From assembly GCA_053919585.1 (NCBI GenBank), contig CM132816.1: DNA of 64,000 bases, one strand, 5' to 3'. This stretch comes from Euprymna scolopes (Eukaryota). The position numbers and the translations under genes are program-made. Shown here piece after piece: positions 18,993 through 64,000 of the stretch; position 1 is the stretch's first letter, and every line of letters starts with the position of its first letter. The notes below the pieces were generated by a model that searched no databases, was not told the DNA's origin, and was given only the letters and a program-made list of their open reading frames with translations.

Positions 18993-21871
18993 CTTTATTC
19001 TAATCTAATACTTTATTCTACTCTAATACTTTTTTCTAATCTACTTATTTTTTCTTATCAAATACGTTATTCTACTCTAATACTTTATTCTAATCTAATA
19101 CTTTATTCGAATATAATACTTTATTCTACTCTAATACTTTATTGTACTTTAATACTTTATTCTAATCAAATACTTTATTATACTGTTATACTTTATTCTT
19201 ATCAAATACTTTATTCTAATCAAATACTTTATTCTAATTTAATACTTTATTCTACTCTAACACTTTATTCTCACTTTAGACTTTATTCTAATCTAATACT
19301 TTATTCTACTCTAATACTTTATTCGAATCTAATACTTTATTCTACTTTAATACTTTATTCTAATCTAATACTTTATTCTAATCTAATACTTTATTCTACT
19401 CTAATACTTTATTCTAATCTAATACTCTATTCTATTCTAGTACTTTATTCTAATGTTAGACTTTATACTAATCTAATACTTTATTCTTATCAAGTACTTT
19501 ATTCTAATCTAATACTTTATTCTACTCTAATACTTTATTCTACTCTAATACTTTATTCTAATCTAATACTTTATTCTACTCTAATACTTTATTCTAATCT
19601 AATACTTTATTCTAATCTAATACTTTATTCTACTCTAATACTTTATTTTACTCTAATACTTTATTCTAATCTAATACTTTATTCTAATCTAATACTTTAT
19701 TCTAATCTAATACTTTATTCTACTCTAATACTTTATTTTACTCTAATACTTTATTCTAATCTAATACTTTATTCTAATCTAATACTTTATTCTAATCTAA
19801 TACTTTATTCTAATCTAATACTTTATTCTAATCTAATACTTTATTCTAATCTAATACTTTATTCTACTCTAATACTTTATTCTAATCTAATACTTTATTC
19901 TAATCTAATACTTTATTCTACTCTAATACTTTATTCTAATCTAATACTTTATTCTAATCTTATACTTTATTCTAATCTCATACTTTATTTTACTCTAATA
20001 CTTTATTCTTATCTAATACTTTATTCTAATCTAATACTTTATTCTTATCTAATACTTTATTCTAATCTAATACTTTATTCTAATCTAATACTTTATTCTA
20101 ATCAAGTCCTTTATTCTAATCTAATATTTTATTCTAATCTAATACTTTATTCTACTCTAATACTTTATTCTAATCTAATACTTTATTCTAATCCAATACT
20201 TTATTCTAATCTAATACTTTATCCTAATCTAATAATTATTCTAATCCAATACTTTATTCTAATCTAATACTTTATTCTAATCAAATACTTTGTTGTACTT
20301 TAATACTTTATTCTAATCAAATACTTTATTGTACTTTAATACTTTATTCTAATCAAATACTTTATTATACTCTTATACTTTATACTTATCAAATACTTAA
20401 TTCTAATCTAATACTTTATTCTAATCTAATACTTTATTCTAATCTAATACTTTATTCTACTCTAATACTTTATTCTAATCTAATACTTTATTCTAATCTA
20501 ATACTTTATTATACTCTTGTACTTTATTCTTATCAAATACTTTATTCTAATCTAATACTTTATTATACTCTAATACTTTATTCTAATCAAATTCTTTATT
20601 CTAATCTAATACTTTATTCTAATCTAATACTTTATTCTAATCTAATACTTTATTCTACTCTAATACTTTATTCTTATCAAATACTTTATTCTTATCAAAT
20701 ACTTTATTCTAATCTAATACTTTATTCTAATCTAATACTTTAATATACTCTAATACTTTATTCTCATCTAAGACTTTATTCTTATCTAATACTTTATTCT
20801 AATCTATTACTTTATTCGAATCTAATACTTTATTCTAATCAAATACTTTATTCGAATCTAATACTTTATTCTAATCAAATACTTTATTCTAATCCAATAC
20901 TTTATTCTAATCTAATACTTTATTCTAATCAAATACTTTATTCTAATCCAATACTTTATTCTAAGTTAATATTTCATTCTAATCTAATACTTTATTCTAA
21001 TCTAATACTTTATTCTAATCTCATACTTTATTCTAATCTAATATTTATTCTAATCTAATAGTTTATTGTAATCTTATACTTTATTCTAATCTAATACTTT
21101 ATTCTAATCAAATACTTTATTCTAATCCAATACTTTATTCTAAGTTAATATTTCATTCTAATCTAATACTTTATTCTAATCTAATACTTTATTCTAATCT
21201 CATACTTTATTCTAATCAAATACTTTATTCTAATCTAATAGTTTATTGTAATCTAATACTTTATTCTACTCTAATACTTTATTCTAATCAAATACTTTAT
21301 TCTCATCTTAGACTTTATTCTAATCTAATACTTTATTCTACTCTAATACCTCATTCTACTCTAATACTTTATTCTAATCAAATACTTTATTCTAATCAAA
21401 TACTTTCTTCTAATCCAATAGTTTATTCTAATCTAATATTTCATTCTAATCAAATACTTTATTCTAATCTTATACTTTATTCTAATCTAATACTTTATTC
21501 TAATCTGATATTTATTCTAATCTAATACTTTATTCTAATCTAATACTTTATTCTAATCTAATACTTTATTCTAATCTAATACTTTATTCTAATCCAATAC
21601 TTTGTTCTAATCTAATATTTCATTCTAATCAAATACTTTATTCTAATCTTATACTTTATTCTAATCTAATACTTTATTCTAATCTGGTATTTATTCTAAT
21701 CTAATACTATATTCTAATCTAATACTTTATTCTAATCTAATACTTTATTGTTATCTAATATTTTTTCTAATCTAATATTTATTCTAATCTAATACTATAT
21801 TCTAATCTAATACTTTCTTCTAATCTAATACTTTATTCTACTCTAATATTTTTTTCTAATCTAATACTTTA

Positions 21872-22075
21872 TTCTAGACTTTTAATTTTCCTTCTGGGTT
21901 CCTGCTTTCTTAACTGTACTGACACGCAGAAGTTCAAGTGTTATGTGAACAAACATCTTGCTGCCCAACTCCCTCCATAGTATCCCTGCAACTTATGTCC
22001 CTGATAGTAACCCCCTACATCAAAATGGCACTGTGCCTTGTTTGGGGTGAAATTGTTATAAAAAACTAAAAATAA
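21872..22075 (+). mobile_element. 3' end of a CR1/L2-group LINE (ORF2 C-terminus, 3' UTR, A-rich tail) directly abutting the 18-bp satellite
   Basis: Reads SRL...LLGSCFLNCTDTQKFKCYVNKHLA*, homologous to TCFPDCTNLQKFKCNVNQHLA on the minus strand at ~52975-53045. Ends in TTATAAAAAACTAAAAATAA. Confidence 0.75.
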
Positions 22076-22469
22076 TTGTTAGTGTTTAAGGAATATCTTG
22101 AGGCGAGAAAACGAGAAGTTGTCACACAATTTTGTTAATCTATGTTTATGAAATACATATTAGGGGTTGTTTCGGATTAGAAATATTAAATTGACCGCGT
22201 AAGCATTTATAATCCGTAAAAAAAAAACTTTCGAAATTGAGAACGACATTTTCTTATGTATAATACAAATTGAAATAGGTTAAAATTTTTGGTATTTTCC
22301 TGACGAGAAAATATCAGATGAAGCCTCTGGTGTCTGCTGATACGAAGGTCATGCTTTTTCTGCCAGACAAAAACACTTAAAGTAGTTGTGATCAGTTCTG
22401 TCATGTCAAACACGAGCAACCCGTGAAGATGTTTATAGTGCAAAATAAAATCCGTAATTTGTTCAATTT

Positions 22470-23400
22470 ATTTATTCAACCTTTATTACTGCTATTTTTT
22501 TATTATTTCTTTTTTTTTCGTTCCTAATTTGTATTCCAACTTGTTTCTTGTCGTCTTTATCTACTTTTTTTACTATATCTTTTCTTTTTTCTTTTCTTTG
22601 TCTTTTTGTTTTTCACTTCAAAAGTTTATTCAATAAATATACTTAACGAATTTCGGATAGGAAATAACCATTGTTTTATGAAAAGAGAATAAAAATGAAT
22701 TTCTTTCTTTCAGATGTTAAGATTTTAACCGCTAAACATTTGATAATTTATGTTTTTTACTTTTTATTTAATTTTTCTTCTTTTTATGTACTTATTTTCT
22801 TTATTTCATTCGTTCTTTAATTTTACATATATTACTTTTCTTTCTTATTCTCGTTTACGTTTTCATTCTTTCTTTTTACAAATATTATTTTTCTTTTCTT
22901 TCTTATTCTCGTTTACTTATTTCATTCTGAAATATATATTTCTTCTTGTTCCTCGCAGATTCAGTTCTAACTTCATTATTTTACTCTTTTCTTTTTATTT
23001 TCTTTTTATCTTTGTTCGTTTTACAAACATTATTTTTTCTTTTCTTTTTTTATTCATCATTTTTATTTTTCTTAATCGTCTTTGTTATTTTCTATTTTCT
23101 TTCTCCCGTGTTTCCACTCTTACTCTTTCCATTATCCTCCCATTTTTCTTTCTCTTCTTCTCTTATTTGCTACCCTTTCTTTTCTTTTCTCTAATTTAAA
23201 TGTGTGTCTCTTTTTCTTCTCTTATCATAACCGCCATTATTCCCGCTACCAGTCGAAACATTTTTGTAACTTCTTTTTGTTCTCTGCATATATTTGTCAT
23301 CCACCCGACGGTCACAACTTCTACCCCCTTTTCACCCTTTCCACCCTTTTTCTCTACCTTCGCCCCCTTCTTCTCCTCTTTCTGTCGTCCATCAAACTAA
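22470..23400. repeat. T/pyrimidine-rich low-complexity tract
   Basis: Strong T/C skew that yields Phe/Leu/Ser-rich pseudo-ORFs in several frames. Confidence 0.8.
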
Positions 23401-25983: not shown

Positions 25984-27620
25984 TTTTTTACATAGGCATA
26001 ACCACTCGAGGATAAGGGTTAAGAGTGTACAGTAGTCAATTGGACAATATAGTAATCGTTAGTAATGGACATTCGGTAAATTTTTTAACTTACGTGGAAC
26101 GGCTCATCAAGAACTTGTTTACGTTGGACTTGAAGACAACCATATTCTAGTCAGCTGGAAAGCATGAAAACGGAAGACAATTCCACAGGCGTGCAGTTCT
26201 AAGAAAGAAGCTTTGTTCATGGAATCTACGTTTAGGTTTAGGCACATATAAAGAGTGGGGAATTATTGATAGTGTTTTCAGATAGACGAGTGTTTCTTGT
26301 GAAAGTTTGGCGAGGGGGGGACCATAGATTGAAGCTCAGTCGAGCACTTGCCATGAAAATAACGATAGAGCAGAGACAAACTCGCAACGTCTCTTCTGTG
26401 AGATAGAGGTTGCAGGGAAGAGAAAAGGACATCTCCTACGAGGCTACGAATTCTATTTTGAACTTTATCAAGGCAGGACAAGTCCTTTCTAGCAGCTCCT
26501 GCCCAGATGTGGCAACAGTACTCCATCCTTGAACGTACCTGGCTCTTATATAGATAGAGAATTGCATCAGCAGTGAGATATCTACTGGATCGATAGAAGG
26601 ATCCCACCATTTTTCCAGCGGCCTTGGCAACGGATTTAATGTAGGTGTTCCATTTAAGATCAGGAGTAACGGTCAAGCCCAGAACTTGAGGACTCCCCTA
26701 GACGAGAGCCATTCATTTCAATTAATGCCAGATGTGGATCAGAACGTTGATGATGTAAAGATAAAAGCTTGGTTTTAGATGCATAAAAAGTAACCAGCAA
26801 CTTCTTTCCCCATTGTACCACGTGCTCAAGATCAGAGGAGAGAGAATAGGAGAGAACTTGTTCGTTTACGGTCTTAGATGTGCTACCATAGATGGTAGTG
26901 TCATCAGCATAAATGTCTACGAATGATGTAAGGATGTGATTTGGAAGATCATTAATGTAGATCGGGAAAAGAGTTGGGTCCAGGATGGACCTCTGATGGA
27001 CTCCAGCATTAATACTGTGAGCTTCTGATTTTTTCCCATTAACTGCTACTCTTATGAACCTATCAGAGACAAATGATTTAATAATTGAGAAGACATTTCA
27101 GCTATACCATGGTTGGAGATCTTTATACCATACCCTATCAAAGGCCTTTGATATGTCAAGAGCAATTGCCCTAGAAAAGTAGCCTCCGTCGAGAGATTCA
27201 CTAATCCTATGAGATATAACTGTAAGCACATCTGCTGTAGATCTAGCAGAACGGAAACCATATTGTGTGTCACTGAGAAGGTTATTTTTGCTGAGATGGT
27301 TTATTACTTCTCTTGTGTATATAGTGAAGTGTTTTCGTGTTGTCTAGTGTNNNNNNNNNNNNNNNNNNNNNNNNNNNNNNNNNNNNNNNNNNNNNNNNNN
27401 NNNNNNNNNNNNNNNNNNNNNNNNNNNNNNNNNNNNNNNNNNNNNNNNNNNNNNNNNNNNNNNNNNNNNNNNNNNNNNTTTATCAGCAAACATCACCTTT
27501 ACAACAAATAGGCGGAACATCTTCTGGGGAATTATATCTTGCCAAACAGGGAAACATTTCATTCATTCATCTGAGCTCTTTGTTAATGAATCTGCCAAAA
27601 GCTGAAATGAACATTCCTTC
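25984..27620 (-). mobile_element. CR1/L2-group LINE, degenerate 3' half of ORF2 (RT and C-terminus), interrupted by an assembly gap
   Basis: YADDTT at ~26895-26912 and GVHQRSILDPTLFPIYINDLP upstream. ORF 26278-26676 contains YLYKSQVRSRMEYCCHIWAGA...LQPLSHRRDVASLSLLYRYFHGKCS, followed by RTARLWN. Frameshifted. Confidence 0.9.
27351..27478. other. Assembly gap (N run)
   Basis: 128 N. Confidence 1.
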
Positions 27621-28318: not shown

Positions 28319-28379
28319 ACAGACAGATAGATAGATAAATAGATAGATAAATAGATAGATAGATAAATAGATAGATAGA
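28319..28379. repeat. (ATAG)n microsatellite
   Basis: Visible GATA/AATA tetramer run. Confidence 0.9.
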
Positions 28380-30810: not shown

Positions 30811-31438
30811 ATTTCTTTGTACTTGCGAAAGATACGTAAATCCAAATTTGATGCTAAAATAACACTCGTCGGCAAAACACATAAAGCGAAGATTTATGTC
30901 ATGTAAGGGAAAAATAAAAAATCTATTCGGCATTAATTTAATTGTTTTATTTAATTTGTTGGAGATGCTGACAAACGCGTTTTATAGCTTAAATGCTTCG
31001 CCTATGGGAAAATCAAAGCAGACTGAAAAAATTATTAAGGAAATTTAACAAAGTTTTTTCAGGCACACTTGGTTGTTGTACGAAGTTGAAGTTTCGAATT
31101 AAAAGACAACGTAAAACTAGTATTGAAGCCAAAAAGAAAAGTTCCATTTCCATTGTTAGAAACAATAGACCAAGAATTAGAATAAAATTGAATAATTTAA
31201 AAAGTAGACTACTCTAAATGGGCATCACCTAGAGTCTAGGTGAAAAAAAAAACAGAATAAACAAGGGTTGGAGTGGATTTTTAACCAGGACTGAATTAAT
31301 ATTTAAGTGGCCATTCGTATAACCTTTTCACACGGGAGGAGACATTTTAAAAGTTAAATGAAGGCAAAATATTCCCGAAAATTGATTTGTCAGAAGATTA
31401 TCTGCAAGTCGAGGTAAAAAAAGAATGTACAAAGTAGT

Positions 31439-33422
31439 TAAACATTAACACAAAATTATGTGTTGATTAAACATTAACAAATAATTATGTGTTCATTAAA
31501 CATAAACACATAATTATATGTTCATTAAACATTAACACATAATTATATGTTGACTATTCATTAATACATAAGTATGTGTTGATTTAACATTAAAACAATT
31601 GTGCATTGATTTAACATTAAAACATAATTATGTGCTGATTAAACATTAAAACATAATTGTCTGTTGATTTAACATTAACACATAATTATGCATTGATTTA
31701 ACATTAACACATAATTATGTGTTGATTAAACAGTAACACATAATTGTGTGTTGATTTAACATTAAAACATAATTATGTGTTGATTAAAACTTAACACATA
31801 ATTATGTGTTGATTAAAACTTAACACATAATTATGTGTTGATTAAAACTTAACACATAATTATGTGTTGATTAAACAGTAACACATAATTGTGTGTTGAT
31901 TTAACATTAACACGTAATTATGTGTTGATTAAAACTTAACACATAATTATGTGTTGATTAAAACTTAACACATAATTATGTGTTGATTAAACAGTAACAC
32001 ATAATTGTGTGTTGATTAAAACATTAACACACAATTATGTGTTAATGTTTAATCAACACACTATGTGCTGATTAAGCATTGACACATAATTATGCGTTGA
32101 TTAATACATTAACACATCATTATGTGTCGATTACACATTAACACGTAATTATGGGTTGATTAAACATTAACATACATAATTATATGTTGATTAAACATTA
32201 ACACACATAATTATGTGTTGATTAAATATTAAAACATAATTATGCGTTGATTACACATTAACATATAATTATGTGTTGATTACACATTAACACATAATTA
32301 TGTGTTGATTAAAACATTAACACACATAATTATGTGTTGATTAAAACATTAACACACATAAGTATATGTTGATTAAACATTAACACACATAAGTATATGT
32401 TGATTAAACATTAACACACATAATTATATGTTGATTAAACATTAACACACATAATTATATGTTGATTAAACATTAACACACATAATTGCGTGTTGATTAA
32501 AACAATAACATACAATTTTATGTGATGACTAAAACATTAACACACATAATTATATGTTGATTAAACATTAACACACATAATTATATGTTGATTAAACATT
32601 AACACACATAATTGCGTGTTGATTAAAACAATAACATACAATTTTATGTGATGACTAAAACATTAACACACATAATTATGTGTTGATTAAACATTAACAC
32701 ACATAATCATATGTTGATTAAACATTAACACACATAAGTATATGTTGATTAAACATTAACACACATAATTATGTGTTGATTAAAACATTAACACACATAA
32801 TTATATGTTGATTAAAACATTAACACACATAATTATATGTTGATTAAACATTAACACACATAATTATATGTTGATTAAACATTAACACACATAATTATAT
32901 GTTGATTAAAACAATAACACACATAATTATATGTTGATTAAACATTAACACACATAATTATATGTTGATTAAAACAATAACACACATAATTATATGTTGA
33001 TTAAACATTAACACACATAATTACGTGTTGATTAAAACAATAACACACATAATTTTATGTGATTACTAAAACATTAACACACATAATTATGTGTTGATTA
33101 AAACATTAACACACATAATTATATGTTGATTAAAACATTAACACACATAATTATGTGTTGATTAAACATTAACACACATAATTATATTGTTGATTAAACA
33201 TTAACACACATAATTACGTGTTGATTAAAACAATAACACACATAATTTTATGTGATGACTAAAACATCAACACACATAATTATGTGTTGATTAAAACATT
33301 AACACACATAATTATGTGTTGATTAATCATTAACACACATAATTATATGTTGATTAAAACATTAACACACATAATTATGTGTTGATTAAACATTAACACA
33401 CATAATTATGTGTAGATTAAAA
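31439..33422. repeat. 29-32-bp satellite AACATTAAC(AC)ACATAATTATGTGTTGATTA with a palindromic core, ~65 units
   Basis: Direct periodicity. Core AACACATAATTATGTGTT is its own reverse complement. Mostly 29-bp units on the left and 31-32-bp units on the right. Confidence 0.97.
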
Positions 33423-48500: not shown

Positions 48501-50030
48501 CACATTACACTAAAGTGTTTTTTTAATCCACAGACTGCACATGGGTAAGGAAACTCCTTACATCCTCGACAAACAGCATCCGAGTGTTCACCCAGACACG
48601 AAGTACATAATTTCAATTCCTTGGCCCTTCGGCATTTAGCTTCGAAAGAAGAATATTTTTTACAGTTCTTAATCAAATGGTCTATAGCATCGCAGAGCTT
48701 ACATAATAAAATGGCCTTCACCTCGCGTGGAGAAGACGCCATATTGGATTTTGTATTAGGTGAAGAAGACGCCATATTGGATTTTGTATCAGGTGAAAAA
48801 GATGCCATATTGGATGTTGTATCAGGTGAAGAAGACGCCATATTGGAGTTTGTATTAGGTGAAGAAGACGGCATATTGGATTTTGTATTAGGTGAAGAAG
48901 ACGCCATATTGGAGTTTGTATTAGGTGAAGAAGACGGCATATTGGATTTTGTATTAGGTGAAGAAGACGCCATATTGGATTTTGTATTAGGTGAAGAAGA
49001 CGCCAATCTTGGCGCACAATTTTCCCGCTGAACATCGAGCGGGGCGGCAATCATGGATTCCATAAATATTATAGTATTTAGAGAACCGTTCGCCACTTCT
49101 ACTCATTAATTCTCTCCTTATAATGTTAGGAAATTTAGCAAATAATACATGGGCTATCAATGCCCCCGAGGTTCTACCCTCAATAAAAAAAAAGTCAGTC
49201 TCGAAAGACTTATCTAGTTCTGTCAGATCTCGTTTAACCTTTTCGAGAAATGACCTTAAATTTTTTTGATCCATTACGCGAGACGGACTAGGAATAATCT
49301 CATCGAAAACCCAATTTCTAATTAAATCTGGATTTAAATATTTTCCCTTAAAAGTTCCACGGCTACATCATAGTTGTTCAATGTTACATATAGACTGGAG
49401 ACCACTTCAAAGGCTTCTCCAAGTAGTTTAGATTTAAGCACTTACAATTTGTCAGCCTTGTTCAAATTATCTGTACAAAATTTGAATTTATTCAGAAAGG
49501 TTCTGAACGAAAACTTATCATCTATGGACGTTCTGGAAAACTTCGGACAGTGCATTTTTACGGGCATAATCGTCGTAGGTTGAATATCTCGTGGCGTATC
49601 TATTTTCAGTTTCAACGATAACAATTTTTCTTCAATTTCCGAAGAAAACTCCTCCGAAATCTCACAAAGGTGCGATTTCTCCTCATTTGGAGTCTTGATT
49701 AGAACCATGTATATCAGATCATCCAGATCCTTCAACCAACTTCTAATTACCGTCTCTGGGGACCTTAAAATATCTGGCGAAGGGTTGTTAACTGCTAACC
49801 ACTTCACAGCACTATTTATACGAAGCTTTTTGGCTTCCCATTTAGTCATTAATTCCTTTCGTCCTTAGAGAACAATTAATAAAATAGCAGAGATATAATT
49901 ATCCGCAAATGTATAAGGTGGCGAAAACCTCCAATATTATTCCAAAACGGAATCGTAACCACAAATCAATAAACACAACGCTAACGAAATTTGTCGTCAG
50001 CAATTTATCGGCCCCAAAATTAGGGGAAAA
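45515..50030 (-). mobile_element. Degenerate BEL/Pao LTR retrotransposon internal region (gag-PR-RT-partial RNase H-integrase)
   Basis: Triple Cys/His knuckle (CKLCDAIDHLIKNC, CTSCLGEHSDAVC, CAVCGLKKHFSVMC), protease CLIDSGSQ (~48363-48386), RT motifs VPHRPV...TTKIRPVFNC, GDIRKAFL and NFYVDN, then DKDGLIRTRGRI and integrase GVDFTG, SDNAKSF, WHGGAWERLI, LTPNHFL. Many frameshifts; 3' end truncated. Confidence 0.93.
48729..49005 (-). repeat. 33-bp in-frame minisatellite in BEL gag, ~8 copies of MASSSPNTKSN
   Basis: Unit GGTGAAGAAGACGCCATATTGGATTTTGTATTA, lying immediately upstream of the zinc knuckles in ORF 48416-49096. Confidence 0.95.
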
Positions 50031-50636
50031 TGCTCTAAGGAATAAGAATCAAGCTCTAAACCAAACTCAAAATTCCCCAGCTACACCAAGAGACATGCAG
50101 ATAAATGGGGGGGGGGCTAACCCTTTCCCGTTATTTATCTTTTTTTTATCGAATAAAATTTCAACCCACAGTATTATTTTAGCACAAAATAAATTCAATG
50201 TGAATATTCAAACATGGCAATGCAAATCATCAATCAAACATTAGCAGATCTCAATTCAATTCAATCAATTAATTTAAAATTAAATTAATATTTAATGCGT
50301 GAAGATAGAACACATTCAAATTTAGTGTGATTTTTACATTTAGACATTTAAATCAAGAAAAAAATCATTAACGGTTTCTCTTACTCTTTTTTTTTCAATT
50401 CAAATCACGTGGGATTTTAATTCGAATAAATGCAACTTAATATACTTGTAACTTACGACCACAATTTCAAGGTCGAATTAATCATTATTTAAACACAATT
50501 TCAAATGTAAGGACGATTCCTTTTAATTTTTAATTTTTTTTTCGTGCAAACACATCGTTAATGGAGACTTATAATCAAGGTCATATTAATTTTTAGCGAC
50601 TGAGGTTAAGTTCAAATTCGAAATTAACGAACGAAA

Positions 50637-50689
<53 letters not shown>

Positions 50690-51378: not shown

Positions 51379-51386
51379 TATATATA

Positions 51387-51730: not shown

Positions 51731-51792
<62 letters not shown>

Positions 51793-52231: not shown

Positions 52232-52347
52232 TATATATATAATGAAAACATTAACTGTTTTAAAAAACCATTTTGAATGCAAATAAAAGAATTTATTTAT
52301 TTAGTTATCTGTTTATTCTACATTTTTCATTTCAAGATACTTCTAAT

Positions 52348-52478
52348 NNNNNNNNNNNNNNNNNNNNNNNNNNNNNNNNNNNNNNNNNNNNNNNNNNNNN
52401 NNNNNNNNNNNNNNNNNNNNNNNNNNNNNNNNNNNNNNNNNNNNNNNNNNNNNNNNNNNNNNNNNNNNNNNNNNNNNN
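52348..52478. other. Assembly gap (N run)
   Basis: 131 N. Confidence 1.
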
Positions 52479-52964: not shown

Positions 52965-54220
52965 AAAGAATCCTGCAAGATGTTGGTTTACGTTACATTT
53001 AAACTTCTGCAGGTTAGTACAGTCAGGGAAGCAGGTAACATGAAAGGAATTCCTATTGATGTTCGAGGGAAAAAATTGTTAGAGTAGAAAGCTTTCTGGC
53101 ATTTAAGGACTTCAACAGTGAAAGGCGAGATTTTGCTATAGAGCGGGTTTGTCGGGAATATGTATGTCGAGGTACAACGAGTTCACCAGGGCACATTTCA
53201 TTAAAAAATATGTAATACAGGCACAGAAACACAACATTAAGTTGATGGAACAGGAGCTGGAGCTTAGTTGACAAAGTGGGAACATTTATCAAATTGAAAA
53301 CTTTTGTGTACCCTATCCAAGACGGAGAGGTTAGTGGTAAATGCACCAGCCCAGATGTGACAACAATACTCCGTGTATGGGCGAATGGTGGCCTTGTAGC
53401 GGTACAGAAGATACTCTCAGGTGTGAAAAGTATTCGCGCTCGATAGGGGCAACCTACCTTTTTTTGCAGAAGCCACCGAAATGTCCTCAATGTATTTATT
53501 ACAGTTCATATTGCCCGAGGAGTTTGAAGGAAGAATTCTTAGGTAGGGTGTTATTTGTCATGGATGTCATTGGTTGAAGAGGCGTTTTGTAATTGTTAAA
53601 GGAGAGCAGCTTAGTCTTACTAGCATTTAACGTTACCATCTATTTGCGGTCTCATTCCATTACGGTTTGGAAGTCATTTTCTAACAATTTTGCCATTGTC
53701 TTAGATTTGTGTACATCAGTTTTCTCTCGTGCATGTCATAGAGCGTTGTATCATCAACAAATATACCGACCACGGACACAATATTATCAGGGAGGTCGTT
53801 TATGAATATCAGGAATAATAGTGGTTCAAGGGTCGATCTTTGAGGCACTCTCACATTAATGTTATGTTGCTTGGATATAGTTCTATTAATGACAATCTGG
53901 ATGTCCCTATTTTCTAAGAAAGATCTAATTATATTTAGTATATGTACGATTAAATTTTCATTAGCAGTCCTTCGTGCCAGACTTTGTCAAAAAGTATGGA
54001 TATATCAAGGACTACAGCCCTGGCTTCGCCCGCATTGTCCGGTGCATGGTGTATGCGTTGGAAGATGACTGTTAAAATATCCACAGTAGAACGGCATTGC
54101 CTAAATCCATGCAGTTTGTCAGAGAAAAGATCAGCTTTTGCGAGGTGGTGTACTAGTACTTGATTAAGGTCTCAGAGATTTTAGCGAAGAGTGAGAAGAG
54201 ACTGATAGACCGATAATTGA
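52965..54220 (-). mobile_element. CR1/L2-group LINE ORF2 3' half (degenerate); its 5' side runs into the 32-bp satellite
   Basis: On the minus strand: NYRSISLFSLFAKISETLI, VLDIS..FDKVWH, IFVDDTT, YKATIRPYTEYCCHIWAGA, FYSNNFFPRTS...CFPDCTNLQKFKCNVNQHL. Confidence 0.9.
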
Positions 54221-57200
54221 GAGGGGGAAGAGACTGATAGACCGATAATTGATAAGGGGAAGAGACTGATAGACCGATAATTGAGAGTGGGAAGAGACTG
54301 ATAGACCGATAATTGAGAGGGGGAAGAGACTGATAGACCGATAATTGAGAGGGGGAAGAGACTGATAGACCGATAATTGATAGGGGGAAGAGACTGATAG
54401 ACCGATAATTGATAGGGGGAAAAGACTGATAGACCGATAATTGAGAGGGGGAAGAGACTGATAGACCGATAATTGAGAGTGGGAAGAGACTGATAGACCG
54501 ATAATTGAGAGGGGGAAGAGACTGATAGACCGATAATTGAGAGTGGGAAGAGACTGATAGACCGATAATTGAGAGGGGGAAAAGACTGATAGACCGATAA
54601 TTGAGAGGGGGAAGAGACTGATAGACCGATAATTGAGAGTGGCAAGAGACTGATAGACCGATAATTGAGAGTGGGAAGAGACTGATAGACCGATAATTGA
54701 TAGGGGGAAGAGACTGATAGACCGATAATTGAGAGGGGGAAGAGACTGATAGACTGATAATTGAGATGGGGAAGAGACTGATAGACCGATAATTGAGAGT
54801 GGGAAGAGACTGATAGACCGATAATTGAGAGGGGGAAGAGACTGATAGACCGATAATTGATAGGGGGAAGAGACTGATAGACCGATAATTGAGAGGGGGA
54901 AGAGACTGATAGACCGATAATTGAGAGGGGGAAGAGACTGATAGACCGATAATTGATAGGGGGAAGAGACTGATAGACCGACAATTGAGAGGGGGAAGAG
55001 ACTGATAGACCGATAATTGATAGGGGGAAGAGACTGATAGACCGATAATTGAGAGGGGGAAGAGACTGATAGACCGATAATTGATAGGGGGAAGAGACTG
55101 ATAGACCGATAATTGAGAGGGGAAAGAAACTGATAGACCGATAATTGATAGGGGGAAGAGACTGATAGACCGATAATTGAGAGTGGCAAAAGACTGATAG
55201 ACCGATAATTGAGAGTGGGAAGAGACTGATAGACCGATAATTGATAGGGGGAAGAGACTGATAGACCGATAATTGAGAGGGGGAAGAGACTGATAGACTG
55301 ATAATTGAGATGGGGAAGAGACTGATAGACCGATAATTGAGAGTGGGAAGAGACTGATAGACCGATAATTGATAGGGGGAAGAGACTGATAGACCGATAA
55401 TTGATAGGGGGAAGAGACTGATAGACCGATAATTGATAGGGGGAAAAGACTGATAGACCGATAATTGAGAGGGGGAAGAGACTGATAGACCGATAATTGA
55501 GAGTGGGAAGAGACTGATAGACCGATAATTGAGAGGGGGAAGAGACTGATAGACCGATAATTAAGAGGGGGAAGAGACTGATAGACCGATAATTGAGAGG
55601 GGGAAAAGACTGATAGACCGATAATTGAGAGGGGGAAGAGACTGATAGACCGATAATTGAGAGTGGCAAGAGACTGATAGACCGATAATTGAGAGTGGGA
55701 AGAGACTGATAGACCGATAATTGATAGGGGGAAGAGACTGATAGACCGATAATTGAGAGGGGGAAGAGACTGATAGACTGATAATTGAGATGGGGAAGAG
55801 ACTGATAGACCGATAATTGAGAGTGGGAAGAGACTGATAGACCGATAATTGAGAGGGGGAAGAGACTGATAGACCGATAATTGATAGGGGGAAGAGACTG
55901 ATAGACCGATAATTGAGAGGGGGAAGAGACTGATAGACCGATAATTGAGAGGGGGAAGAGACTGATAGACCGATAATTGATAGGGGGAAGAGACTGATAC
56001 ACCGATAATTGAGAGGGGGAAGAGACTGATAGACCGATAATTGAGAGGGGGAAGAGACTGATAGACCGATAATTGATAGGGGGAAGAGACTGATAGACCG
56101 ATAATTGAGAGGGGGAAGAGACTGATAGACCGATAATTGAGAGTGGGAAGAGACTGATAGACCGATAATTGATAGGGGGAAGAGACTGATAGACCGATAA
56201 TTGATAGGGGGAAGAGACTGATAGATCGATAATTGATAGGGGGAAGAGACTGATAGACCGATAATTGATAGGGGGAAGAGACTGATAGACCGAGAATTGA
56301 TAGGGGGAAGAGACTGATAGACCGATAATTGATAGGGGGAAGAGACTGATAGACCGATAATTGATAGGGGGAAGAGACTGATAGACCGATAATTGATAGG
56401 GGGAAGAGACTGATAGACCGATAATTGATAGGGGGAAGAGACTGATAGACCGATAATTGATAGGGGGAAGAGACTGATAGACCGATAATTGAGAGGGGGA
56501 AGAGACTGATAGACCGATAATTGAGAGGGGGAAGAGACTGATAGACCGATAATTGATAGGGGGAAGAGACTGATAGACCGATAATTGATAGGGGGAAGAG
56601 AGTGATAGACCGATAATTGAGAGTGGGAAGAGACTGATAGACCGATAATTGATAGGGGGAAGAGACTGATAGACCGATAATTGAGAGGGGGAAGAGACTG
56701 ATAGACCGATAATTGATAGGGGAAAGAGACTGATAGACCGATAATTGATAGGGGGAAGAGACTGATAGACCGATAATTGAGAGGGGGAAGAGACTGATAG
56801 ACCGATAATTGAGAGGGGGAAGAGACTGATAGACCGATAATTGATAGGGGGAAGAGACTGATAGACCGATAATTGAGAGGGGGAAGAGACTGATAGACCG
56901 ATTATTGATAGGGGGAAGAGACTGATAGACCGATAATTGAGAGGGGGAAGAGACTGATAGACCGATAATTGATAGGGGGAAGAGACTGATAGACCGATAA
57001 TTGAGAGGGGGAAGAGACTGATAGACCGATAATTGAGAGGGGGAAGAGACTGATAGACCGATAATTGAGAGTGGGAAGAGACTGATAGACCGATAATTGA
57101 TAGGGGGGAAGAGACTGATAGACCGATAATTGAGAGGGGGAAAAGACTGATAGACCGATAATTGAGAGGGGGAAGAGACTGATAGACCGATAATTGAGAG

Positions 57201-60200
57201 GGGGAAGAGACTGATAGACCGATAATTGAGAGGGGGAAAAGACTGATAGACCGATAATTAAGAGGGGGAAGAGACTGATAGACCGATAATTGAGAGTGGG
57301 AAGAGACTGATAGACCGATAATTGAGAGTGGGAAGAGACTGATAGACCGATAATTGATAGGGGGAAGAGTCTGATAGACCGATAATTGAGAGGGGGAAGA
57401 GACTGATAGACCGATAATTGAGAGGGGGAAGAGACTGATAGACTGATAATTGAGATGGGGAAGAGACTGATAGACCGATAATTGAGAGTGGGAAGAGACT
57501 GATAGACCGATAATTGAGAGGGGGAAGAGACTGATAGACCGATAATTGAGAGGGGGAAGAGACTGATAGACCGATAATTGAGAGGGGGAAGAGACTGATA
57601 GACTGATAAGTGAGATGGGGAAGAGACTGATGGACCGATAATTGAGAGTTGGAAGAGACTGATAGACCGATAATTGAGAGGGGGAAGAGACTGATAGACC
57701 GATAATTGATAGGGGGAAGAGACTGATAGACCGATAATTGAGAGGGGGAAGAGACTGATAGACCGATAATTGAGAGGAGGAAGAGACTGATAGACCAATA
57801 ATTGATAGGGGGAAGAGACTGATAGACCGACAATTGAGAGGGGGAAGAGACTGATAGACCGATAATTGATAGGGGGGAGAGACTGATAGACCGATAATTG
57901 AGAGGGGGAAGAGACTGATAGACCGATAATTGATAGGGGGAAGAGACTGATAGACCGATAATTGAGAGGGGGAAGAAACTGATAGACCGATAATTGATAG
58001 GGGGAAGAGGCTGATAGACCGATAATTGAGAGTGGCAAGAGACTGATAGACCGATAATTGAGAGTGGGAAGAGACTGATAGACCGATAATTGATAGGGGG
58101 AAGAGACTAATAGACCGATAATTGAGAGGGGGAAGAGACTGATAGACTGATAATTGAGATGGGGAAGAGACTGATAGACCGATAATTGAGAGTGGAAGAG
58201 ACTGATAGACCGATTATTGAGAGGGGGAAGAGACTGATAGACCGATAATTGATAGGGGGAAGAGACTGATAGACCGATAATTGATAGGGGGAAAAGACTG
58301 ATAGACCGATAATTGAGAGGGGGAAGAGACTGATAGACCGATAATTGAGAGGGGGAAGAGACTGATAGACCGATAATTGAGAGGGGGAAGAGACTGATAG
58401 ACCGATAATTGATAGGGGGAAGAGACTGATAGACCGATAATTGATAGGGGGAAGAGACTGATAGACCGATAATTGAGAGGGGGAAGAGACTGATAGACTG
58501 ATAATTGAGATGGGGAAGAGACTGATAGACCGATAATTGAGAGTGGGAAGAGACTGATAGACCGATAATTGAGAGGGGGAAGAGACTGATAGACCGATAA
58601 TTGAGAGGGGGAAGAGACTGATAGACCGATAATTGAGAGGGGGAAGAGACTGATAGACTGATAATTGAGATGGGGAAGAGACTGATGGACCGATAATTGA
58701 GAGTTGGAAGAGACTGATAGACCGATAATTGAGAGGGGGAAGAGACTGATAGACCGATAATTGATAGGGGGAAGAGACTGATAGACCGATAATTGAGAGG
58801 GGGGAGAGACTGATAGACCGATAATTGAGAGGGGGAAGAGACTGATAGACCGATAATTGATAGGGGGAAGAGACTAATAGACCGATAATTGAGAGGGGGA
58901 AGAGACTGATAGACTGATAATTGAGATGGGGAAGCGACTGATAGACCGATAATTGAGAGTGGAAGAGACTGATAGACCGATAATTGAGAGGGGGAAGAGA
59001 CTGATAGACCGATAATTGATAGGGGGAAGAGACTGATAGACCGATAATTGATAGGGGGAAAAGACTGATAGACCGATAATTGAGAGGGGGAAGAGACTGA
59101 TAGACCGATAATTGAGAGTGGGAAGAGACTGATAGACCGATAATTGAGAGGGGGAAGAGACTGATAGACCGATAATTGAGAGGGGGAAGAGACTGATAGA
59201 CCGATAATTGAGAGGGGGAAAAGACTGATAGACCGATAATTGAGAGGGGGAAGAGACTGATAGACCGATAATTGAGAGTGGCAAGAGACTGATAGACCGA
59301 TAATTGAGAGTGAGAAGAGACTGATAGACCGATAATTGATAGGGGGAAGAGACTGATAGATCGATAATTGAGAGGGGGAAGAGACTGATAGACTGATAAT
59401 TGAGATGGGGAAGAGACTGATAGACCGATAATTGAGAGTGGGAAGAGACTGATAGACCGATAATTGAGAGGGGGAAGAGACTGATAGACCGATAATTGAT
59501 AGGGGGAAGAGACTGATAGACAGATAATTGAGAGGGGGAAGAGACTGATAGACCGATAATTGAGAGGGGGAAGAGACTGATAGACCGATAATTGATAGGG
59601 GGAAGAGACTGATAGACCGACAATTGAGAGGGGGAAGAGACTGATAGACCGATAATTGAGAGTGGGAAGAGACTGATAGACCGATAATTGATAGGGGGAA
59701 GAGACTGATAGACCGATAATTGAGAGGGGGAAGAGACTGATAGACCGATAATTGATAGGGGGAAGAGACTGATAGACAGATAATTGATAGGAGGAAGAGA
59801 CTGATAGACCGATAATTGAGAGGGGGAAGAGACTGATAGACCGATAATTGATAGGAGGGAAGAGACTGATAGACCGATAATTGAGAGGGGGAAGAGACTG
59901 ATAGACCGATAATTGAGAGTGGGAAGAGACTGATAGACCGATAATTGATAGGGGGAAGAGACTGATAGACCGATAATTGATAGGGGAAGAGACTGATAGA
60001 TCGATAATTGATAGGGGGAAGAGACTGATAGACCGATAATTGATAGGGGGAAGAGACTGATAGACCGATAATTGATAGGGGGAAGAGACTGATAGACCGG
60101 TAATTGATAGGGGGAAGAGACTGATAGACCGATAATTGATAGGGGGAAGAGACTGATAGACCGATAATTGAGAGGGGGAAGAGACTGATAGACCGATAAT

Positions 60201-63200
60201 TGAGAGGGGGAAGAGACTGATAGACCGATAATTGAGAGGGGGAAGAGACTGATAGACCGATAATTGATAGGGGGAAGAGAGTGATAGACCGATAATTGAG
60301 AGTGGGAAGAGACTGATAGACCAATAATTGATAGGGGGAAGAGACTGATAGACCGATAATTGAGAGGGGGAAGAGACTGATAGACCGATAATTGAGAGGG
60401 GGAAGAGACTGATAGACCGATAATTGATAGGGGGAAGAGACTGATAGACCGATAATTGAGAGGGGGAAGAGACTGATAGACCGATAATTGAGAGGGGGAA
60501 GAGACTGATAGACCGATAATTGATAGGGGGAAGAGACTGATAGACCGATTATTGAGAGGGGGAAGAGACTGATAGACCGATTATTGATAGGGGGAAGAGA
60601 CTGATAGACCGATAATTGAGAGGGGGAAGAGACTGATAGACCGATAATTGATAGGGGGAAGAGACTGATAGACCGATAATTGATAGGGGGAAGAGACTGA
60701 TAGACCGATAATTGAGAGGGGGAAGAGACTGATAGACCGATAATTGAGAGTGGGAAGAGACTGATTGACCGATAATTGATAGGGGGGAAGAGACTGATAG
60801 ACCGATAATTGATAGGGGGAAAAGACTGATAGACCGATAATTGAGAGGGGGAAGAGACTGATAGACCGATAATTGAGAGGGGGAAGAGACTGATAGACCG
60901 ATAATTGAGAGGGGGAAAAGACTGATAGACCGATAATTGAGAGGGGGAAGAGACTGATAGACCGATAATTGAGAGTGGGAAGAGACTGATAGACCGATAA
61001 TTGAGAGTGGGAAGAGACTGATAGACCGATAATTGATAGGGGGAAGAGACTGATAGACCGATAATTGAGAGGGGGAAGAGACTGATAGACCGATAATTGA
61101 GAGGGGGAAGAGACTGATAGACCGATAATTGATAGGGGGAAGAGACTGATAGACCGATAATTGATAGGGGGAAGAGACTGATAGACCGATAATTGAGAGG
61201 GGGAAGAGACTGATAGACTGATAATTGAGATGGGGAAGAGACTGATAGACCGATAATTGAGAGTGGGAAGAGACTGATAGACCGATAATTGAGAGGGGGA
61301 AGAGACTGATAGACCGATAATTGAGAGGGGGAAGAGACTGATAGACCGATAATTGAGAGGGGGAAGAGACTGATAGACTGATAATTGAGATGGGGAAGAG
61401 ACTGATGGACCGATAATTGAGAGTGGGAAGAGACTGATAGACCGATGATTGAGAGGGGGAAGAGACTGATAGACCGATAATTGATAGGGGGAAGAGACTG
61501 ATAGACCGATAATTGAGAGGAGGAAGAGACTGATAGACCGATAATTGAGAGGGGGAAGAGACTGATAGACCGATAATTGATAGGGGGAAGAGACTGATAG
61601 ACCGATAATTGAGAGTGGGAAGAGAGTGATAGACCGATAATTGATAGGGGGAAGAGACTAATAGACCGATAATTGAGAGGGGGAAGAGATTGATAGACTG
61701 ATAATTGAGATGGGGAAGAGGCTGATAGACCGATAATTGAGAGGGGGAAGAGACTGATAGACCGATAATTGAGAGGGGGAAGAGACTGATAGACCGATAA
61801 TTGATAGGGGGAAGAGACTGATAGACCGATAATTGAGAGGGGGAAGAGACTTATAGACCGATAATTGATAGGGGAAGAGACTGATAGACCGATAATTGAG
61901 AGGGGGAAGAGACTGATAGACCGATAATTGATAGGGGGAAGAGACTGATAGACCGATAATTGAGAGGGGGAAGAGACTGATAGACTTATAATTGAGAGTG
62001 GGAAGAGACTGATAGACCGATAATTGATAGGGGGGAAGGGACTGATAGACCGATAATTGATAGGGGGAAAAGACTGATAGACCGATAATTGAGAGGGGGA
62101 AGAGACTGATAGACCGATAATTGAGAGGGGGAAGAGACTGATAGACCGATAATTGAGAGGGGGAAGAGACTGATAGACCGATAATTGATAGGGGGAAGAG
62201 ACTGATAGACCGATAATTGAGAGTGGGAAGAGACTGATAGACCGATAATTGAGAGTGGGAAGAGACTGATAGACCGATAATTGATAGGGGGAAGAGACTG
62301 ATAGACCGATAATTGAGAGGGGGAAGAGACTGATAGACCGATAATTGAGAGGGGGAAGAGACTGATAGACCGATAATTGATAGGGGGAAGAGACTGATAG
62401 ACCGATAATTGATAGGGGGAAGAGACTGATAGACCGATAATTGATAGGGGGAAGAGACTGATAGACCGATAATTGAGAGGGGGAAGAGACTGATAGACCG
62501 ATAATTGAGAGTGGGAAGAGACTGATAGACCGATAATTGATAGGGGGAAAAGACTGATAGACCGATAATTGAGAGGGGGAAGAGACTGATAGGCCGATAA
62601 TTGAGAGGGGGAAGAGACTGATAGACCGATAATTGAGAGTGGGAAGAGACTGATAGACCGATAATTGAGAGGGGGAAGAGACTGATAGACCGATAATTGA
62701 GAGTGGGAAGAGACTGATAGACCGATAATTGATAGGGGGAAGAGACTGATAGACCGATAATTGATAGGGGAAGAGACTGATAGATCGATAATTGATAGGG
62801 GGAAGAGACTGATAGACCGATAATTGATAGGGGGAAGAGACTGATAGACCGATAATTGATAGGGGGAAGAGACTGATAGACCGATAATTGATAGGGGGAA
62901 GAGACTGATAGACCGATAATTGATAGGGGGAAGAGACTGATAGACCGATAATTGAGAGGGGGAAGAGACTGATAGACCGATAATTGAGAGGGGGAAGAGA
63001 CTGATAGACCGATAATTGAGAGGGGGAAGAGACTGATAGACCGATAATTGAGAGGGGGAAGAGACTGATAGACCGATAATTGATAGGGGGAAGAGACTTA
63101 TAGACCGATAATTGAGAGTGGCAAGAGACTGATAGACCGATAATTGATAGGGGGAAGAGACTGATAGACCGATAATTGATAGGGGGAAGAGACTGATAGA

Positions 63201-64000
63201 CCGATAATTGAGAGGGGGAAGAGACTGATAGACCGATAATTGATAGGGGGAAGAGACTGATAGACCGATAATTGAGAGGGGGAAGAGACTGATAGACCGA
63301 TAATTGAGAGGGGGAAGAGACTGATAGACCGATAATTGATAGGGGGAAGAGACTGATAGACCGATAATTGAGAGGGGGAAGAGACTGATAGACCGATAAT
63401 TGATAGGGGGAAGAGACTGATAGACCGATAATTGATAGGGGGAAGAGACTGATAGACCGATAATTGAGAGTGGGAAGAGACTGATAGACCGATAATTGAT
63501 AGGGGGAAGAGACTGATACACCGATAATTGAGAGGGGGAAGAGACTGATAGACCGATAATTGAGAGGGGGAAGAGACTGATAGACCGATAATTGATAGGG
63601 GGAAGAGACTGATAGACCGATAATTGAGAGGGGGAAGAGACTGATAGACCGATAATTGAGAGGGGGAAGAGACTGATAGACCGATAATTGATAGGGGGAA
63701 GAGACTGATAGACCGATAATTGAGAGGGGGAAGAGACTGATAGACCGATAATTGATAGGGGGAAGAGACTGATAGACCGATAATTGAGAGGGGGAAGAGA
63801 CTGATAGACCGATAATTGATAGTGGGAAGAGACTGATAGACCGATAATTGAGAGGGGGAAGAGACTGATAGACTTATAATTGAGAGTGGGAAGAGACTGA
63901 TAGACCGATAATTGATAGGGGGGAAGGGACTGATAGACCGATAATTGATAGGGGGAAAAGACTGATAGACCGATAATTGAGAGGGGGAAGAGACTGATAG
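54188..64000. repeat. 32-bp satellite GA(G/T)AGGGGGAAGAGACTGATAGACCGATAATT, ~305 units, runs off the right edge
   Basis: Direct 32-bp periodicity with high homogeneity. Confidence 0.99.

What the first reader, a model, noticed from the sequence alone, without database searches (positions are those of the whole stretch)
21820..64000. Repeated in-place birth of satellites from short pieces of retroelement coding sequence
Seen: at four independent sites the tandem monomer matches the local ORF of the host retroelement, and the ORF resumes at the array edge. These are the 32-mer (LINE RT NYRxISL), the 29-32-mer (Gypsy RT xINTH), the 18-mer (LINE FYSNxFF) and the 33-mer (BEL gag). Two- and three-copy duplications of 20-29 bp are also present (33700, 41358, 41498). 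The monomers are unrelated to each other and most are bounded by short direct microhomologies. Known: TE-derived satellites are described, often from UTRs, LTRs or Helitron/MITE internal repeats. Inference: this genome has a largely sequence-independent process (microhomology-primed slippage or repeated template re-priming in break repair, then unequal exchange) that turns 18-33-bp segments into multi-kb arrays. The window would then show a 2, 8, 65, 300, 1000 copy progression. I cannot tell from here whether this is already published for the organism.
Basis: partly seen in the sequence, partly recalled or inferred. Interest (0 to 1): 0.8.

Follow-up and report, generated by a model that had tools for sequence, protein, structure and literature searches.

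The report
Satellites grown inside dead retroelement genes
Four old, broken jumping-gene copies in this 5.9-Gb mollusc genome each carry a tandem array (8 to about 1,800 copies) that grew in place from an 18-33-base piece of the element's own coding sequence; it is a clean set of examples of a known route to satellite DNA, not a new mechanism.

Summary
All four arrays (18-mer, 31-mer, 33-mer, 32-mer) sit inside one copy of a LINE, a Ty3/gypsy-type element, a BEL/Pao element and a second LINE. The same element continues collinearly on both sides. For the 18-mer and 32-mer this needed sequence fetched from outside the window.

Unamplified sister copies elsewhere in the genome carry the unit once, at that same site. 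The exact 32-, 31- and 20-mer units occur at this locus only. The 33-mer has one further two-copy case in another BEL copy. Sister copies already carry imperfect direct repeats one unit apart (13/15, about 10/12 and 6/7 bases). Blocks of 0.5, 2 and 8.2 kb show later growth by block duplication.

In-place birth is shown. Low-identity look-alike arrays of the 18-, 20- and 32-mers exist at other loci, and I could not inspect them.

The mechanism matches published models (slippage at non-contiguous repeats; TE-derived minisatellites). The scan has already reported the same thing on other DNA of this genome (s1-247308, s1-279859, s1-279866, s1-268937).

The parts
1..21876 (+). 18-bp-unit array (unit TATTCTAATCTAATACTT). 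It continues 10,321 bp to the left of the window, for about 32.2 kb in total. It contains roughly 2-kb higher-order blocks and an 8,233-bp exact internal duplication.
21877..22077 (+). Right flank of the 18-mer array: C-terminal end of LINE ORF2 (FYSRLLIFLLGSCF..FKCYVNKHL) and the 3' end. The left half of the same LINE lies left of the window (window-equivalent -11740 to -10317).
30837..31437 (+). Ty3/gypsy-type RT, left flank of the 31-mer array (..FPKIDLSEDYLQVEVKKECTK).
31438..33421 (+). 29-31-bp-unit array, 65 copies, with a 126-bp higher-order period. The unit carries a perfect 16-nt palindrome (ACACATAATTATGTGT) that sister copies lack.
33422..34393 (+). Ty3/gypsy-type RT, right flank (LKLLPFGLKVAPSLFLQIMD..YLDDILI). 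It includes a private 29-bp x2.2 duplication at 33700-33763.
37274..37447 (+). Short diverged LINE RT fragment (NYHPFSL..QYEF..) forming the left flank of the 20-mer array.
37448..39242 (+). 20-bp-unit array, 90 copies, with a 500-bp higher-order period. The exact unit is private to this locus. The right flank (from 39247) is a MITE-like inverted-repeat element, so in-place origin is not shown for this array.
41353..41575 (.). Two small tandem duplications: 20 bp x2.2 at 41353-41397 and 22 bp x3.6 at 41496-41575.
46799..50641 (-). BEL/Pao retrotransposon copy (gag with DUF1759 and a CCHC knuckle, protease, RT). It is 84-89% identical to at least 40 scored sister copies.
48727..49005 (-). 33-bp-unit array, 8.5 copies, in frame in BEL gag (SSSPNTKSNMA repeated).
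52974..54187 (-). LINE RT downstream of the NYRxISL motif (a decayed copy, about 79% identical to sister copies). It is the 3'-side flank of the 32-mer array.
54188..64000 (-). 32-bp-unit array. In LINE sense the unit is CAATTATCGGTCTATCAGTCTCTTCCCCCTCT, which encodes NYRSISLFPL. It continues 2,097 bp to the right of the window, where the upstream LINE RT resumes.
27351..27478 (.). Assembly gap, not adjacent to any array or junction.
52348..52478 (.). Assembly gap, 496 bp from the 3' limit of the LINE that hosts the 32-mer. It is not used in any claim.

Best explanation
These are locus-specific minisatellite or satellite arrays that arose after insertion, inside four dead retroelement copies.

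Step 1 (inferred from the anatomy). A segment of 18-33 bp was duplicated in tandem. For the 33-, 31- and 32-mers the join lies between two short imperfect direct repeats that already stood one unit apart in the element. This fits slipped-strand mispairing at non-contiguous repeats or microhomology-mediated repair.

Step 2 (partly shown). Once two or more copies existed, the array grew and was homogenised by unit-level slippage and by unequal exchange or duplication of multi-unit blocks. The blocks of 126 bp, 500 bp, about 2 kb and 8.2 kb are shown; the growth process is read from them.

The coding origin is incidental. The hosts are decayed copies, and coding remnants are simply the part of old repeats that can still be recognised. 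Five further arrays in the same 124 kb have no recognisable coding flanks.
For: - Both flanks of each of the four arrays are collinear parts of one element copy.
- Sister copies of each family carry the unit once at the same site: 10 LINE, 9 gypsy-type and 12 BEL copies aligned. The 18-mer has its best match at the parental site in 11 of 11 loci.
- The host families are confirmed by Pfam: RVT_1 for the LINE; RVT_1, RT_RNaseH_2, Integrase_H2C2 and rve in that order for the gypsy type; DUF1759, RVT_1 and Peptidase_A17 for BEL/Pao.
- Direct repeats are present in unamplified copies: BEL GTGGAGAAGACGCCA and GTGAAGAAGGCGCCA 33 bp apart in 12 of 12 copies; LINE CCCTCT and CC(A/C)CTCT 32 bp apart; gypsy type TAGTTAAAC and TAGATTAAAAC 31 bp apart.
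- Genome-wide counts of junction-spanning patterns equal the local counts: 357/357, 17/17 and 86/86.
- Early stages exist. Another BEL copy has 2.2 copies of the same 33 bp. Other gypsy-type copies carry private two-copy duplications.
- Block growth. In the 18-mer array, 2-kb blocks are 93-99% identical while neighbouring units are about 70% identical. A 600-bp foldback insert was carried along five times at 97.6-100% identity.
- Reads from three other samples pile up 8-20 times single-copy depth on a 1.2-kb stub of the 32-mer array. That is the order expected for an array of 10-24 kb.
Against: - Low-identity (64-76%) look-alike arrays of the 18-, 20- and 32-mers exist at other loci, and their flanks could not be read.
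- The 18-mer locus lacks about 13 nt of parental sequence next to the array, and its boundary microhomology is only 3-4 nt.
- Only half of the 31-mer unit is clearly parental.
- Most isolated two-copy duplications show no microhomology beyond chance, so direct repeats are not required for step 1.
- No long reads were available, so array lengths rest on the assembly and on shallow read depth. The 8.2-kb exact duplicate may be an assembly duplication.
Confidence: 0.8

Rival explanations
1. Seeded families. A short tandem repeat (2-3 units) arose once in a master element, or the same slippage-prone segment amplified repeatedly in many copies. On this view the 18-mer, and perhaps the 32- and 33-mers, are multi-locus TE-borne families rather than single private births.
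For: - Arrays with the same 18-bp period and 66-75% identity exist at 7 or more other loci.
- About 11 loci hold arrays 64-71% like the 32-mer array.
- A second BEL copy has a 2.2-copy duplication of the same 33 bp.
Against: - Exact units are private to this locus.
- 10 of 10 aligned LINE copies and 12 of 12 aligned BEL copies carry the unit once.
- The tree does not place the two-copy BEL copy as sister to the window copy.
- Purine-rich or AT-rich composition may inflate the low-identity matches. The look-alikes of the 32-mer have other periods (about 26-30 bp).
Confidence: 0.15
2. The satellites came first, and the retroelements (for example 5'-truncated LINEs) inserted into or beside them.
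For: Within the window alone, the 18-mer and 32-mer arrays show an element on only one side, as a truncated LINE inserted into a satellite would.
Against: - The fetched flanks show the other half of the same element, collinear and in the same orientation, at the far end of both arrays.
- The unit is itself a piece of the element.
Confidence: 0.02
3. The first duplication was made by the element's own reverse transcriptase, through template switching between direct repeats during insertion. Only the later growth was genomic.
For: - All four hosts are retroelements.
- The joins lie at direct repeats.
- Established knowledge: retroviral reverse transcriptases make such duplications.
Against: - Five other arrays in the region have no retroelement flanks.
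- Other notes of the scan report the same anatomy in a mariner transposon and in a zinc-finger exon (not checked by me).
- Nothing distinguishes this timing from post-insertion slippage.
Confidence: 0.05
4. Assembly artefact: the arrays, or much of their length, are produced by mis-assembly of repeats.
For: An 8,233-bp stretch inside the 18-mer array is repeated with 6,524 bases exactly identical, which could be a false duplication.
Against: - Three independent raw-read runs give 8-20 times single-copy depth on the 32-mer stub, and contigs of a fourth run cover the junction region.
- The arrays carry internal variants and higher-order structure.
Confidence: 0.03

Closest known systems
TE-derived minisatellites and satellites in the human genome (Ahmed & Liang 2012, PMC3389668; Jurka & Gentles 2006, Alu-derived minisatellites, as cited there)
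   Same: Tandem arrays whose unit is a piece of a transposable element copy. They expand locally, are mostly single-locus, and in the Alu cases have short direct repeats at the array ends.
   Different: Here the arrays reach 12-32 kb and about 370-1,800 units, derive from coding parts of LINE, gypsy-type and BEL elements, and are densely clustered. Arrays make up 49% of 124 kb here, against 2.2% in a 188-kb TE-centred sample of the same genome.
Minisatellite birth by slipped-strand mispairing at non-contiguous repeats (Taylor & Breden 2000) and by direct repeats flanking the first unit (Haber & Louis 1998), both as summarised in PMC3389668
   Same: Imperfect direct repeats one unit apart exist in the unamplified progenitor. 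The array ends in an incomplete unit equal to the second repeat, for example the 15-nt tail of the 33-mer array.
   Different: The 18-mer and most two-copy duplications here show no more than 4 nt of microhomology, so the model fits only some of the events.
Satellites derived from LINE ORF2 or other TE ORFs (PROsat, Pvc20 and chicken CR1-derived HinfI, listed in the review PMC9659126)
   Same: The monomer is homologous to part of a retroelement ORF.
   Different: In my understanding those are long-unit, multi-locus satellite families recognised by similarity. Here the unit is 18-33 bp and the parent copy is still attached on both sides. The review notes that non-coding and repetitive TE parts are the usual source.
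Earlier reports of this scan on the same genome (s1-247308, s1-279859, s1-279866, s1-268937)
   Same: Single-locus arrays of tens of kb grown from a short piece of a dead retroelement or gene, with the parent readable on both sides.
   Different: This window holds four such cases, plus small duplications, within 64 kb. This allows a comparison of stages, and shows direct repeats in sister copies.

Membership tests
TE-derived tandem repeat born in place | The unit is homologous to a segment that is present once in unamplified copies of the same element family, at the site of the array. | tested here: met
   32-mer 21-28/32 and 33-mer 26-33/33 at the homologous site. 18-mer best match 13-15/18 at the parental site in 11 of 11 loci. 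31-mer: left 19 nt 17-18/19, and best hit at the homologous site in 9 of 13 loci.
TE-derived tandem repeat born in place | Both array flanks are collinear parts of one element copy. | tested here: met
   About 13 nt of parental sequence are missing beside the 18-mer array. The 20-mer array fails this test, because its right flank is a MITE-like element.
TE-derived tandem repeat born in place | The array is specific to one locus. | tested here: inconclusive
   Exact junction patterns are private: 357/357, 17/17 and 86/86; the 33-mer has 6 local matches plus one two-copy case elsewhere. However, 64-76% look-alike arrays exist at other loci, and their flanks were not readable.
Minisatellite birth at non-contiguous direct repeats (Taylor & Breden; Haber & Louis) | Short direct repeats one unit apart in the progenitor sequence. 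| tested here: met
   Met for three of the four arrays: BEL 13/15 in 12 of 12 sister copies, LINE 6/7, gypsy type about 10/12 in the host copy and weaker in sister copies. Not met for the 18-mer (3-4 nt) or for 11 of 14 isolated two-copy duplications.
Minisatellite birth at non-contiguous direct repeats (Taylor & Breden; Haber & Louis) | The terminal unit is incomplete and corresponds to the second direct repeat. | tested here: met
   The 33-mer array has 8.5 copies and ends in the 15-nt repeat. The 32-mer array has about 372.2 units.
Mobile or dispersed satellite (TE with internal tandem repeats; satellite inserted here) | The same units occur at many loci with different or TE-terminal flanks. 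| tested here: inconclusive
   Not met at 93% or higher identity. Low-identity arrays elsewhere are unresolved.
Host element classes (LINE, Ty3/gypsy, BEL/Pao) | Diagnostic domains in the expected order. | tested here: met
   RVT_1 for the LINE. RVT_1, then RT_RNaseH_2, Integrase_H2C2 and rve for the gypsy type. DUF1759, RVT_1 and Peptidase_A17 for BEL/Pao. The LINE clade and the LTRs were not examined.

The most novel reading that the evidence does not exclude
This genome has an unusually active, regionally clustered process that expands almost any short tandem duplication into arrays of 10-100 kb. The same slippage-prone TE segments (for example the LINE FYSNSF and NYRxISL codons) have given rise to arrays independently in several element copies. 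If so, the genome holds hundreds of dated, parent-attached satellite births at every stage, and these arrays contribute measurably to its large size.
Probability: 0.3. Interest if true: 0.65.

Novelty: new member of a known kind. Interest (0 to 1): 0.4.

Why it matters
How satellites and minisatellites begin is usually inferred long after the event, when the parent sequence is gone. Here the parent is still attached on both sides, and many unamplified sister copies show the pre-amplification state, including the direct repeats where the first duplication joined. Stages from 2 to about 1,800 copies lie side by side.

That makes birth, boundary choice and block-wise growth directly measurable. 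If the other notes of the scan hold, the same can be done across the whole genome.

There is also a practical point. Such arrays give very long artificial ORFs (for example 1,349 codons at 54167-58213) and interrupt TE annotation, so they can mislead gene and repeat annotation of large mollusc genomes.

Tried and rejected
As a weak substitute I used the 51 TE-centred loci already fetched (188 kb).
- The look-alike arrays found could not be fetched for the same reason.
- The first search with four 32-mer units did not even report the window's own array, so I did not use it as evidence of privacy. Pattern searches replaced it.
- No long-read runs were offered. Shallow short reads were used instead, and their depth estimates are rough.
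- Global self-identity at multi-unit lags was uninformative for the 32-, 31- and 18-mer arrays because of indels.
- An ungapped unit-versus-parent test with an 18-mer dimer was not above the shuffled control. The single-unit test was decisive.
- The left flank of the 20-mer gave only hits to an adjacent, unrelated LINE fragment. Its in-place origin stays unproven.
- Pfam found nothing in several long stop-free pieces. The flanks of the five extra arrays look non-coding and were not scanned.
- A tree of BEL copies did not resolve whether the two-copy copy (L058) shares its duplication by descent with the window copy.
- Literature searches found no paper in the held library on TE-derived satellites in cephalopods or in this genome. 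The organism's name is coded, and I did not establish the species.
Full report
**What is there**

TRF on the window finds five long arrays with short units:
- an 18-mer at 1-21876 (1212 copies, 78% matches);
- a 29/31-mer at 31438-33421 (65 copies, 86%);
- a 20-mer at 37448-39242 (90 copies, 95%);
- a 33-mer at 48727-49005 (8.5 copies, 93%);
- a 32-mer at 54188-64000 (307 copies, 95%).

The window is G000:C34:29016001-29080000 of a 5.9-Gb assembly. The two assembly gaps (27351-27478 and 52348-52478) lie at least 496 bp from every element and junction used below, so nothing here depends on continuity across them.

**Array ends outside the window**

I fetched 30 kb on each side.

The 32-mer array ends 2,097 bp beyond the window, giving 11.9 kb and about 372 units. 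On the minus strand the LINE RT then resumes with ..SWKMVIAVPVYKKFCERTNPPNYRSISL. At 54188 the RT continues downstream with NYRSISLFSLFAKISETLI...

The 18-mer array starts 10,321 bp before the window, giving 32.2 kb and about 1,790 units. Its left flank is LINE ORF2 ending ..IPRCKKTF. Its right flank (21877 onward) reads FYSRLLIFLLGSCF..FKCYVNKHL.

So both arrays that looked one-sided in the window have the two halves of one LINE copy around them. This removes the idea that truncated LINEs landed in older satellites.

**Comparison with unamplified sister copies**

Searches of the window's own genome with the flanks found many copies of each element family: 18,604 first-look candidates for the LINE, 726 for the gypsy-type element and 346 for BEL.

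- LINE, 32-mer. Ten LINE copies carry the 32 bp once, at the NYRxISL codons. Upstream RT sequence follows in them where the window has further units.
- Gypsy type, 31-mer. Nine copies read ..TKYLTINTHRGLYRLKRLPFGLKV.. straight through the site.
- BEL, 33-mer. Twelve copies carry the 33 bp once.
- LINE, 18-mer. The unit, read as TTCTAATCTAATACTTTA, has its single best match (13-15/18) at TTCTATTCTAATAGTTTC, the FYSNSF codons, in 11 of 11 LINE loci. That is exactly where the array sits in its host. Closer LINE copies (84-90% identical) align 40 nt into the last units of the array.

Ungapped unit-to-parent identity is 21-28/32 for the 32-mer and 26-33/33 for the 33-mer, in all but one sister copy of each family, against 20 or less for shuffled units. 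For the 31-mer only the left 19 nt are clearly parental (17-18/19), but the best hit is at the homologous site in 9 of 13 loci.

Pfam confirms the host classes:
- RVT_1 for the LINE;
- RVT_1, RT_RNaseH_2, Integrase_H2C2 and rve, in that order, for the gypsy type;
- DUF1759, RVT_1 and Peptidase_A17 for BEL/Pao.

The 33-mer lies in gag, just upstream of a CCHC knuckle. It is in frame, so the ORF stays open across it.

**Locus privacy**

I searched the whole genome with patterns that span a unit junction, allowing up to 3 mismatches, and compared the counts with the local counts.

| Array | Genome-wide matches | Local matches |
|---|---|---|
| 32-mer | 357 | 357 |
| 31-mer | 17 | 17 |
| 20-mer | 86 | 86 |
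| 33-mer | 7 | 6 |

The one extra 33-mer hit is another BEL copy (C15:59485640) with a 2.2-copy duplication of the same 33 bp. A tree of BEL copies leaves that copy and the window copy in one unresolved polytomy, so shared descent and recurrence cannot be told apart.

Searches with long chunks of the arrays give a less tidy picture.
- 18-mer: arrays with the same 18-bp period and 66-75% identity at 7 or more other loci.
- 20-mer: 64-76% at 12 or more loci, with other periods.
- 32-mer: 64-71% at about 11 loci with periods near 26-30 bp, plus about 25 single-unit hits at 89-97% that are simply other LINE copies.

They may be independent births from the same LINE segments, old dispersed families, or in part composition-driven matches. 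This is the main open point.

**Boundaries**

In unamplified sister copies the unit is already bracketed by imperfect direct repeats one unit apart:
- BEL: GTGGAGAAGACGCCA and GTGAAGAAGGCGCCA, 13/15;
- LINE: CCCTCT and CC(A/C)CTCT;
- gypsy-type host copy: TAGTTAAAC and TAGATTAAAAC, weaker in sister copies.

The 33-mer array ends in the incomplete 15-nt unit that the Taylor-Breden model predicts.

The 18-mer has only 3-4 nt of such repeat, and about 13 nt of parental sequence are missing beside it.

Among 14 isolated exact two-copy duplications in all the sequence I held (about 370 kb), microhomology is 0-2 nt in 11 and 5-6 nt in 3. The chance frequency of 4 nt or more is 3.2%. Direct repeats therefore mark the arrays that grew large, but they are not a general feature of small duplications here.

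The 31-mer unit carries a perfect 16-nt palindrome that nine sister copies lack. This could favour stalling and slippage; that is inference.

**Growth**

- The 20-mer array is more alike at a lag of 500 bp (97.5%) than at 20 bp (95.3%).
- TRF reports a 126-bp period in the 31-mer array.
- In the 18-mer array, blocks of about 2 kb are 93-99% identical while neighbouring units are about 70% identical.
- A 600-bp foldback element that landed in the 18-mer array now stands there five times at 97.6-100% identity.
- An 8,233-bp stretch is repeated with 6,524 bases exact. That is either a very recent duplication or an assembly duplication.

Copy number does not track age. Unit identity is 100, 93, 86, 95 and 78% for 2, 8.5, 65, 307 and 1212 copies.

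**Independent reads**

No long-read runs were offered. I laid three raw short-read runs from other samples, each read to about 0.33 times coverage, on a stretch ending in a 1.2-kb stub of the 32-mer array.

- Mean depth on the stub was about 2.7, 2.6 and 6.7. That is 8-20 times single copy, the order expected if all reads of an array of 10-24 kb fall on the stub.
- Contigs of a fourth run cover the junction region.

The array is therefore real at multi-kb scale. The exact lengths remain those of the assembly.

**Context**

The 124 kb around the finding holds ten arrays totalling about 61 kb, or 49%. The 51 TE-centred loci fetched from all over the genome (188 kb) have 2.2% in tandem repeats with units of 10 bp or more. 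They do contain several arrays of 7-10 copies and many two-copy duplications, some of them private events inside gypsy-type copies. The region is thus strongly enriched.

Five of its arrays (34-, 24-, 31-, 36- and 23-mers) have no recognisable coding flanks. Retroelement coding sequence is therefore probably not a special substrate; it is merely recognisable.

Other notes of this scan report the same anatomy elsewhere in this genome. Among those with follow-ups are a 38-mer from RNase H, a 74-mer from a LINE RT, a 221-bp unit from a gypsy integrase and an 84-bp unit from a zinc-finger exon. I did not check them.

**Comparison with what is known**

- TE-derived minisatellites are well documented. 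23% of human minisatellites and satellites derive from TEs, most at single loci (PMC3389668).
- That paper also summarises the two birth models invoked here, and the Alu-derived cases with flanking direct repeats.
- A review lists satellites derived from LINE ORF2 and notes that non-coding TE parts are the more usual source (PMC9659126).
- I found no paper in the held library describing this for cephalopods or other large mollusc genomes. A cuttlefish genome paper reports 5.83% simple repeats without further analysis (PMC13218726). I did not establish that this is the same species.

**Verdict**

In-place birth is well supported for the 32-, 33-, 31- and 18-mers and is not shown for the 20-mer. 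The mechanism is a known one. The claim of a genome-wide, sequence-independent process is plausible but was not tested here, and the low-identity look-alike arrays need to be read before 'locus-private' can be stated without qualification.

Noticed in passing
window 4216-4814, 12449-13047, 14429-15030, 16394-16996, 18396-18992: A foldback (MITE-like) element of about 600 bp with long terminal inverted repeats sits inside the 18-mer array five times. With their surroundings the copies are 97.6-100% identical, so it was captured once and then amplified as part of a 2-kb higher-order block.
   Followed up: partly
window-equivalent -3100 to 13900 (L018 plus window 1-13900): An 8,233-bp stretch of the 18-mer array is repeated in tandem, with 6,524 consecutive identical bases. 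This is either a very recent large duplication or an assembly duplication.
   Followed up: partly
Its left flank is a small diverged LINE RT fragment. Its right flank is a multi-copy element with inverted repeats that matches many loci on both strands.
   Followed up: partly
window 36992-37271 (-) next to 37285-37447 (+): A minus-strand fragment of the LINE ORF2 C-terminal region directly abuts a plus-strand LINE RT fragment in head-to-head arrangement. The origin was not examined.
   Followed up: no
L015:2260-2700 (just right of the 32-mer array's upstream LINE stub): A reading frame that resembles the N-terminal DNA-binding part of a Tc1/mariner-type transposase (..KWMKKFKETGSVHDKPRSGRP..). 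The LINE homology stops after 199 bp here. This is judged by eye only and no domain search was run.
   Followed up: no
window 54167-58213 (-) and other frames of the arrays: Because the units have no stop codon in some frames, the arrays give very long artificial ORFs (up to 1,349 codons) that gene predictors could call.
   Followed up: no
L058:1488-1559 (G000:C15:59485640 region): Another BEL/Pao copy with a 2.2-copy duplication of the same 33 bp that forms the 8.5-copy array in the window.
   Followed up: yes
L020:1-4213, L020:9866 to L019:1067, L015:9525 to L016:1836, L016:5372-9882, L017:9476-9962: Five more short-unit arrays (34-, 24-, 31-, 36- and 23-mers, 0.5 to more than 4.5 kb) lie within 30 kb of the window. 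Arrays make up about 49% of the 124-kb region, against 2.2% in TE-centred loci elsewhere.
   Followed up: partly
window 31438-33421: The 31-mer unit contains a perfect 16-nt palindrome (ACACATAATTATGTGT). Nine sister copies of the element read differently at this point (..CATAGAGGGTTATATAG..).
   Followed up: partly
window 52976 and 53341-53407 (loose ends): Hundreds to thousands of reads from other LINE copies run on past window 52976 with a shared sequence that the window lacks. The host LINE is therefore cut or interrupted at its 3' side, about 500 bp from the assembly gap.
   Followed up: no
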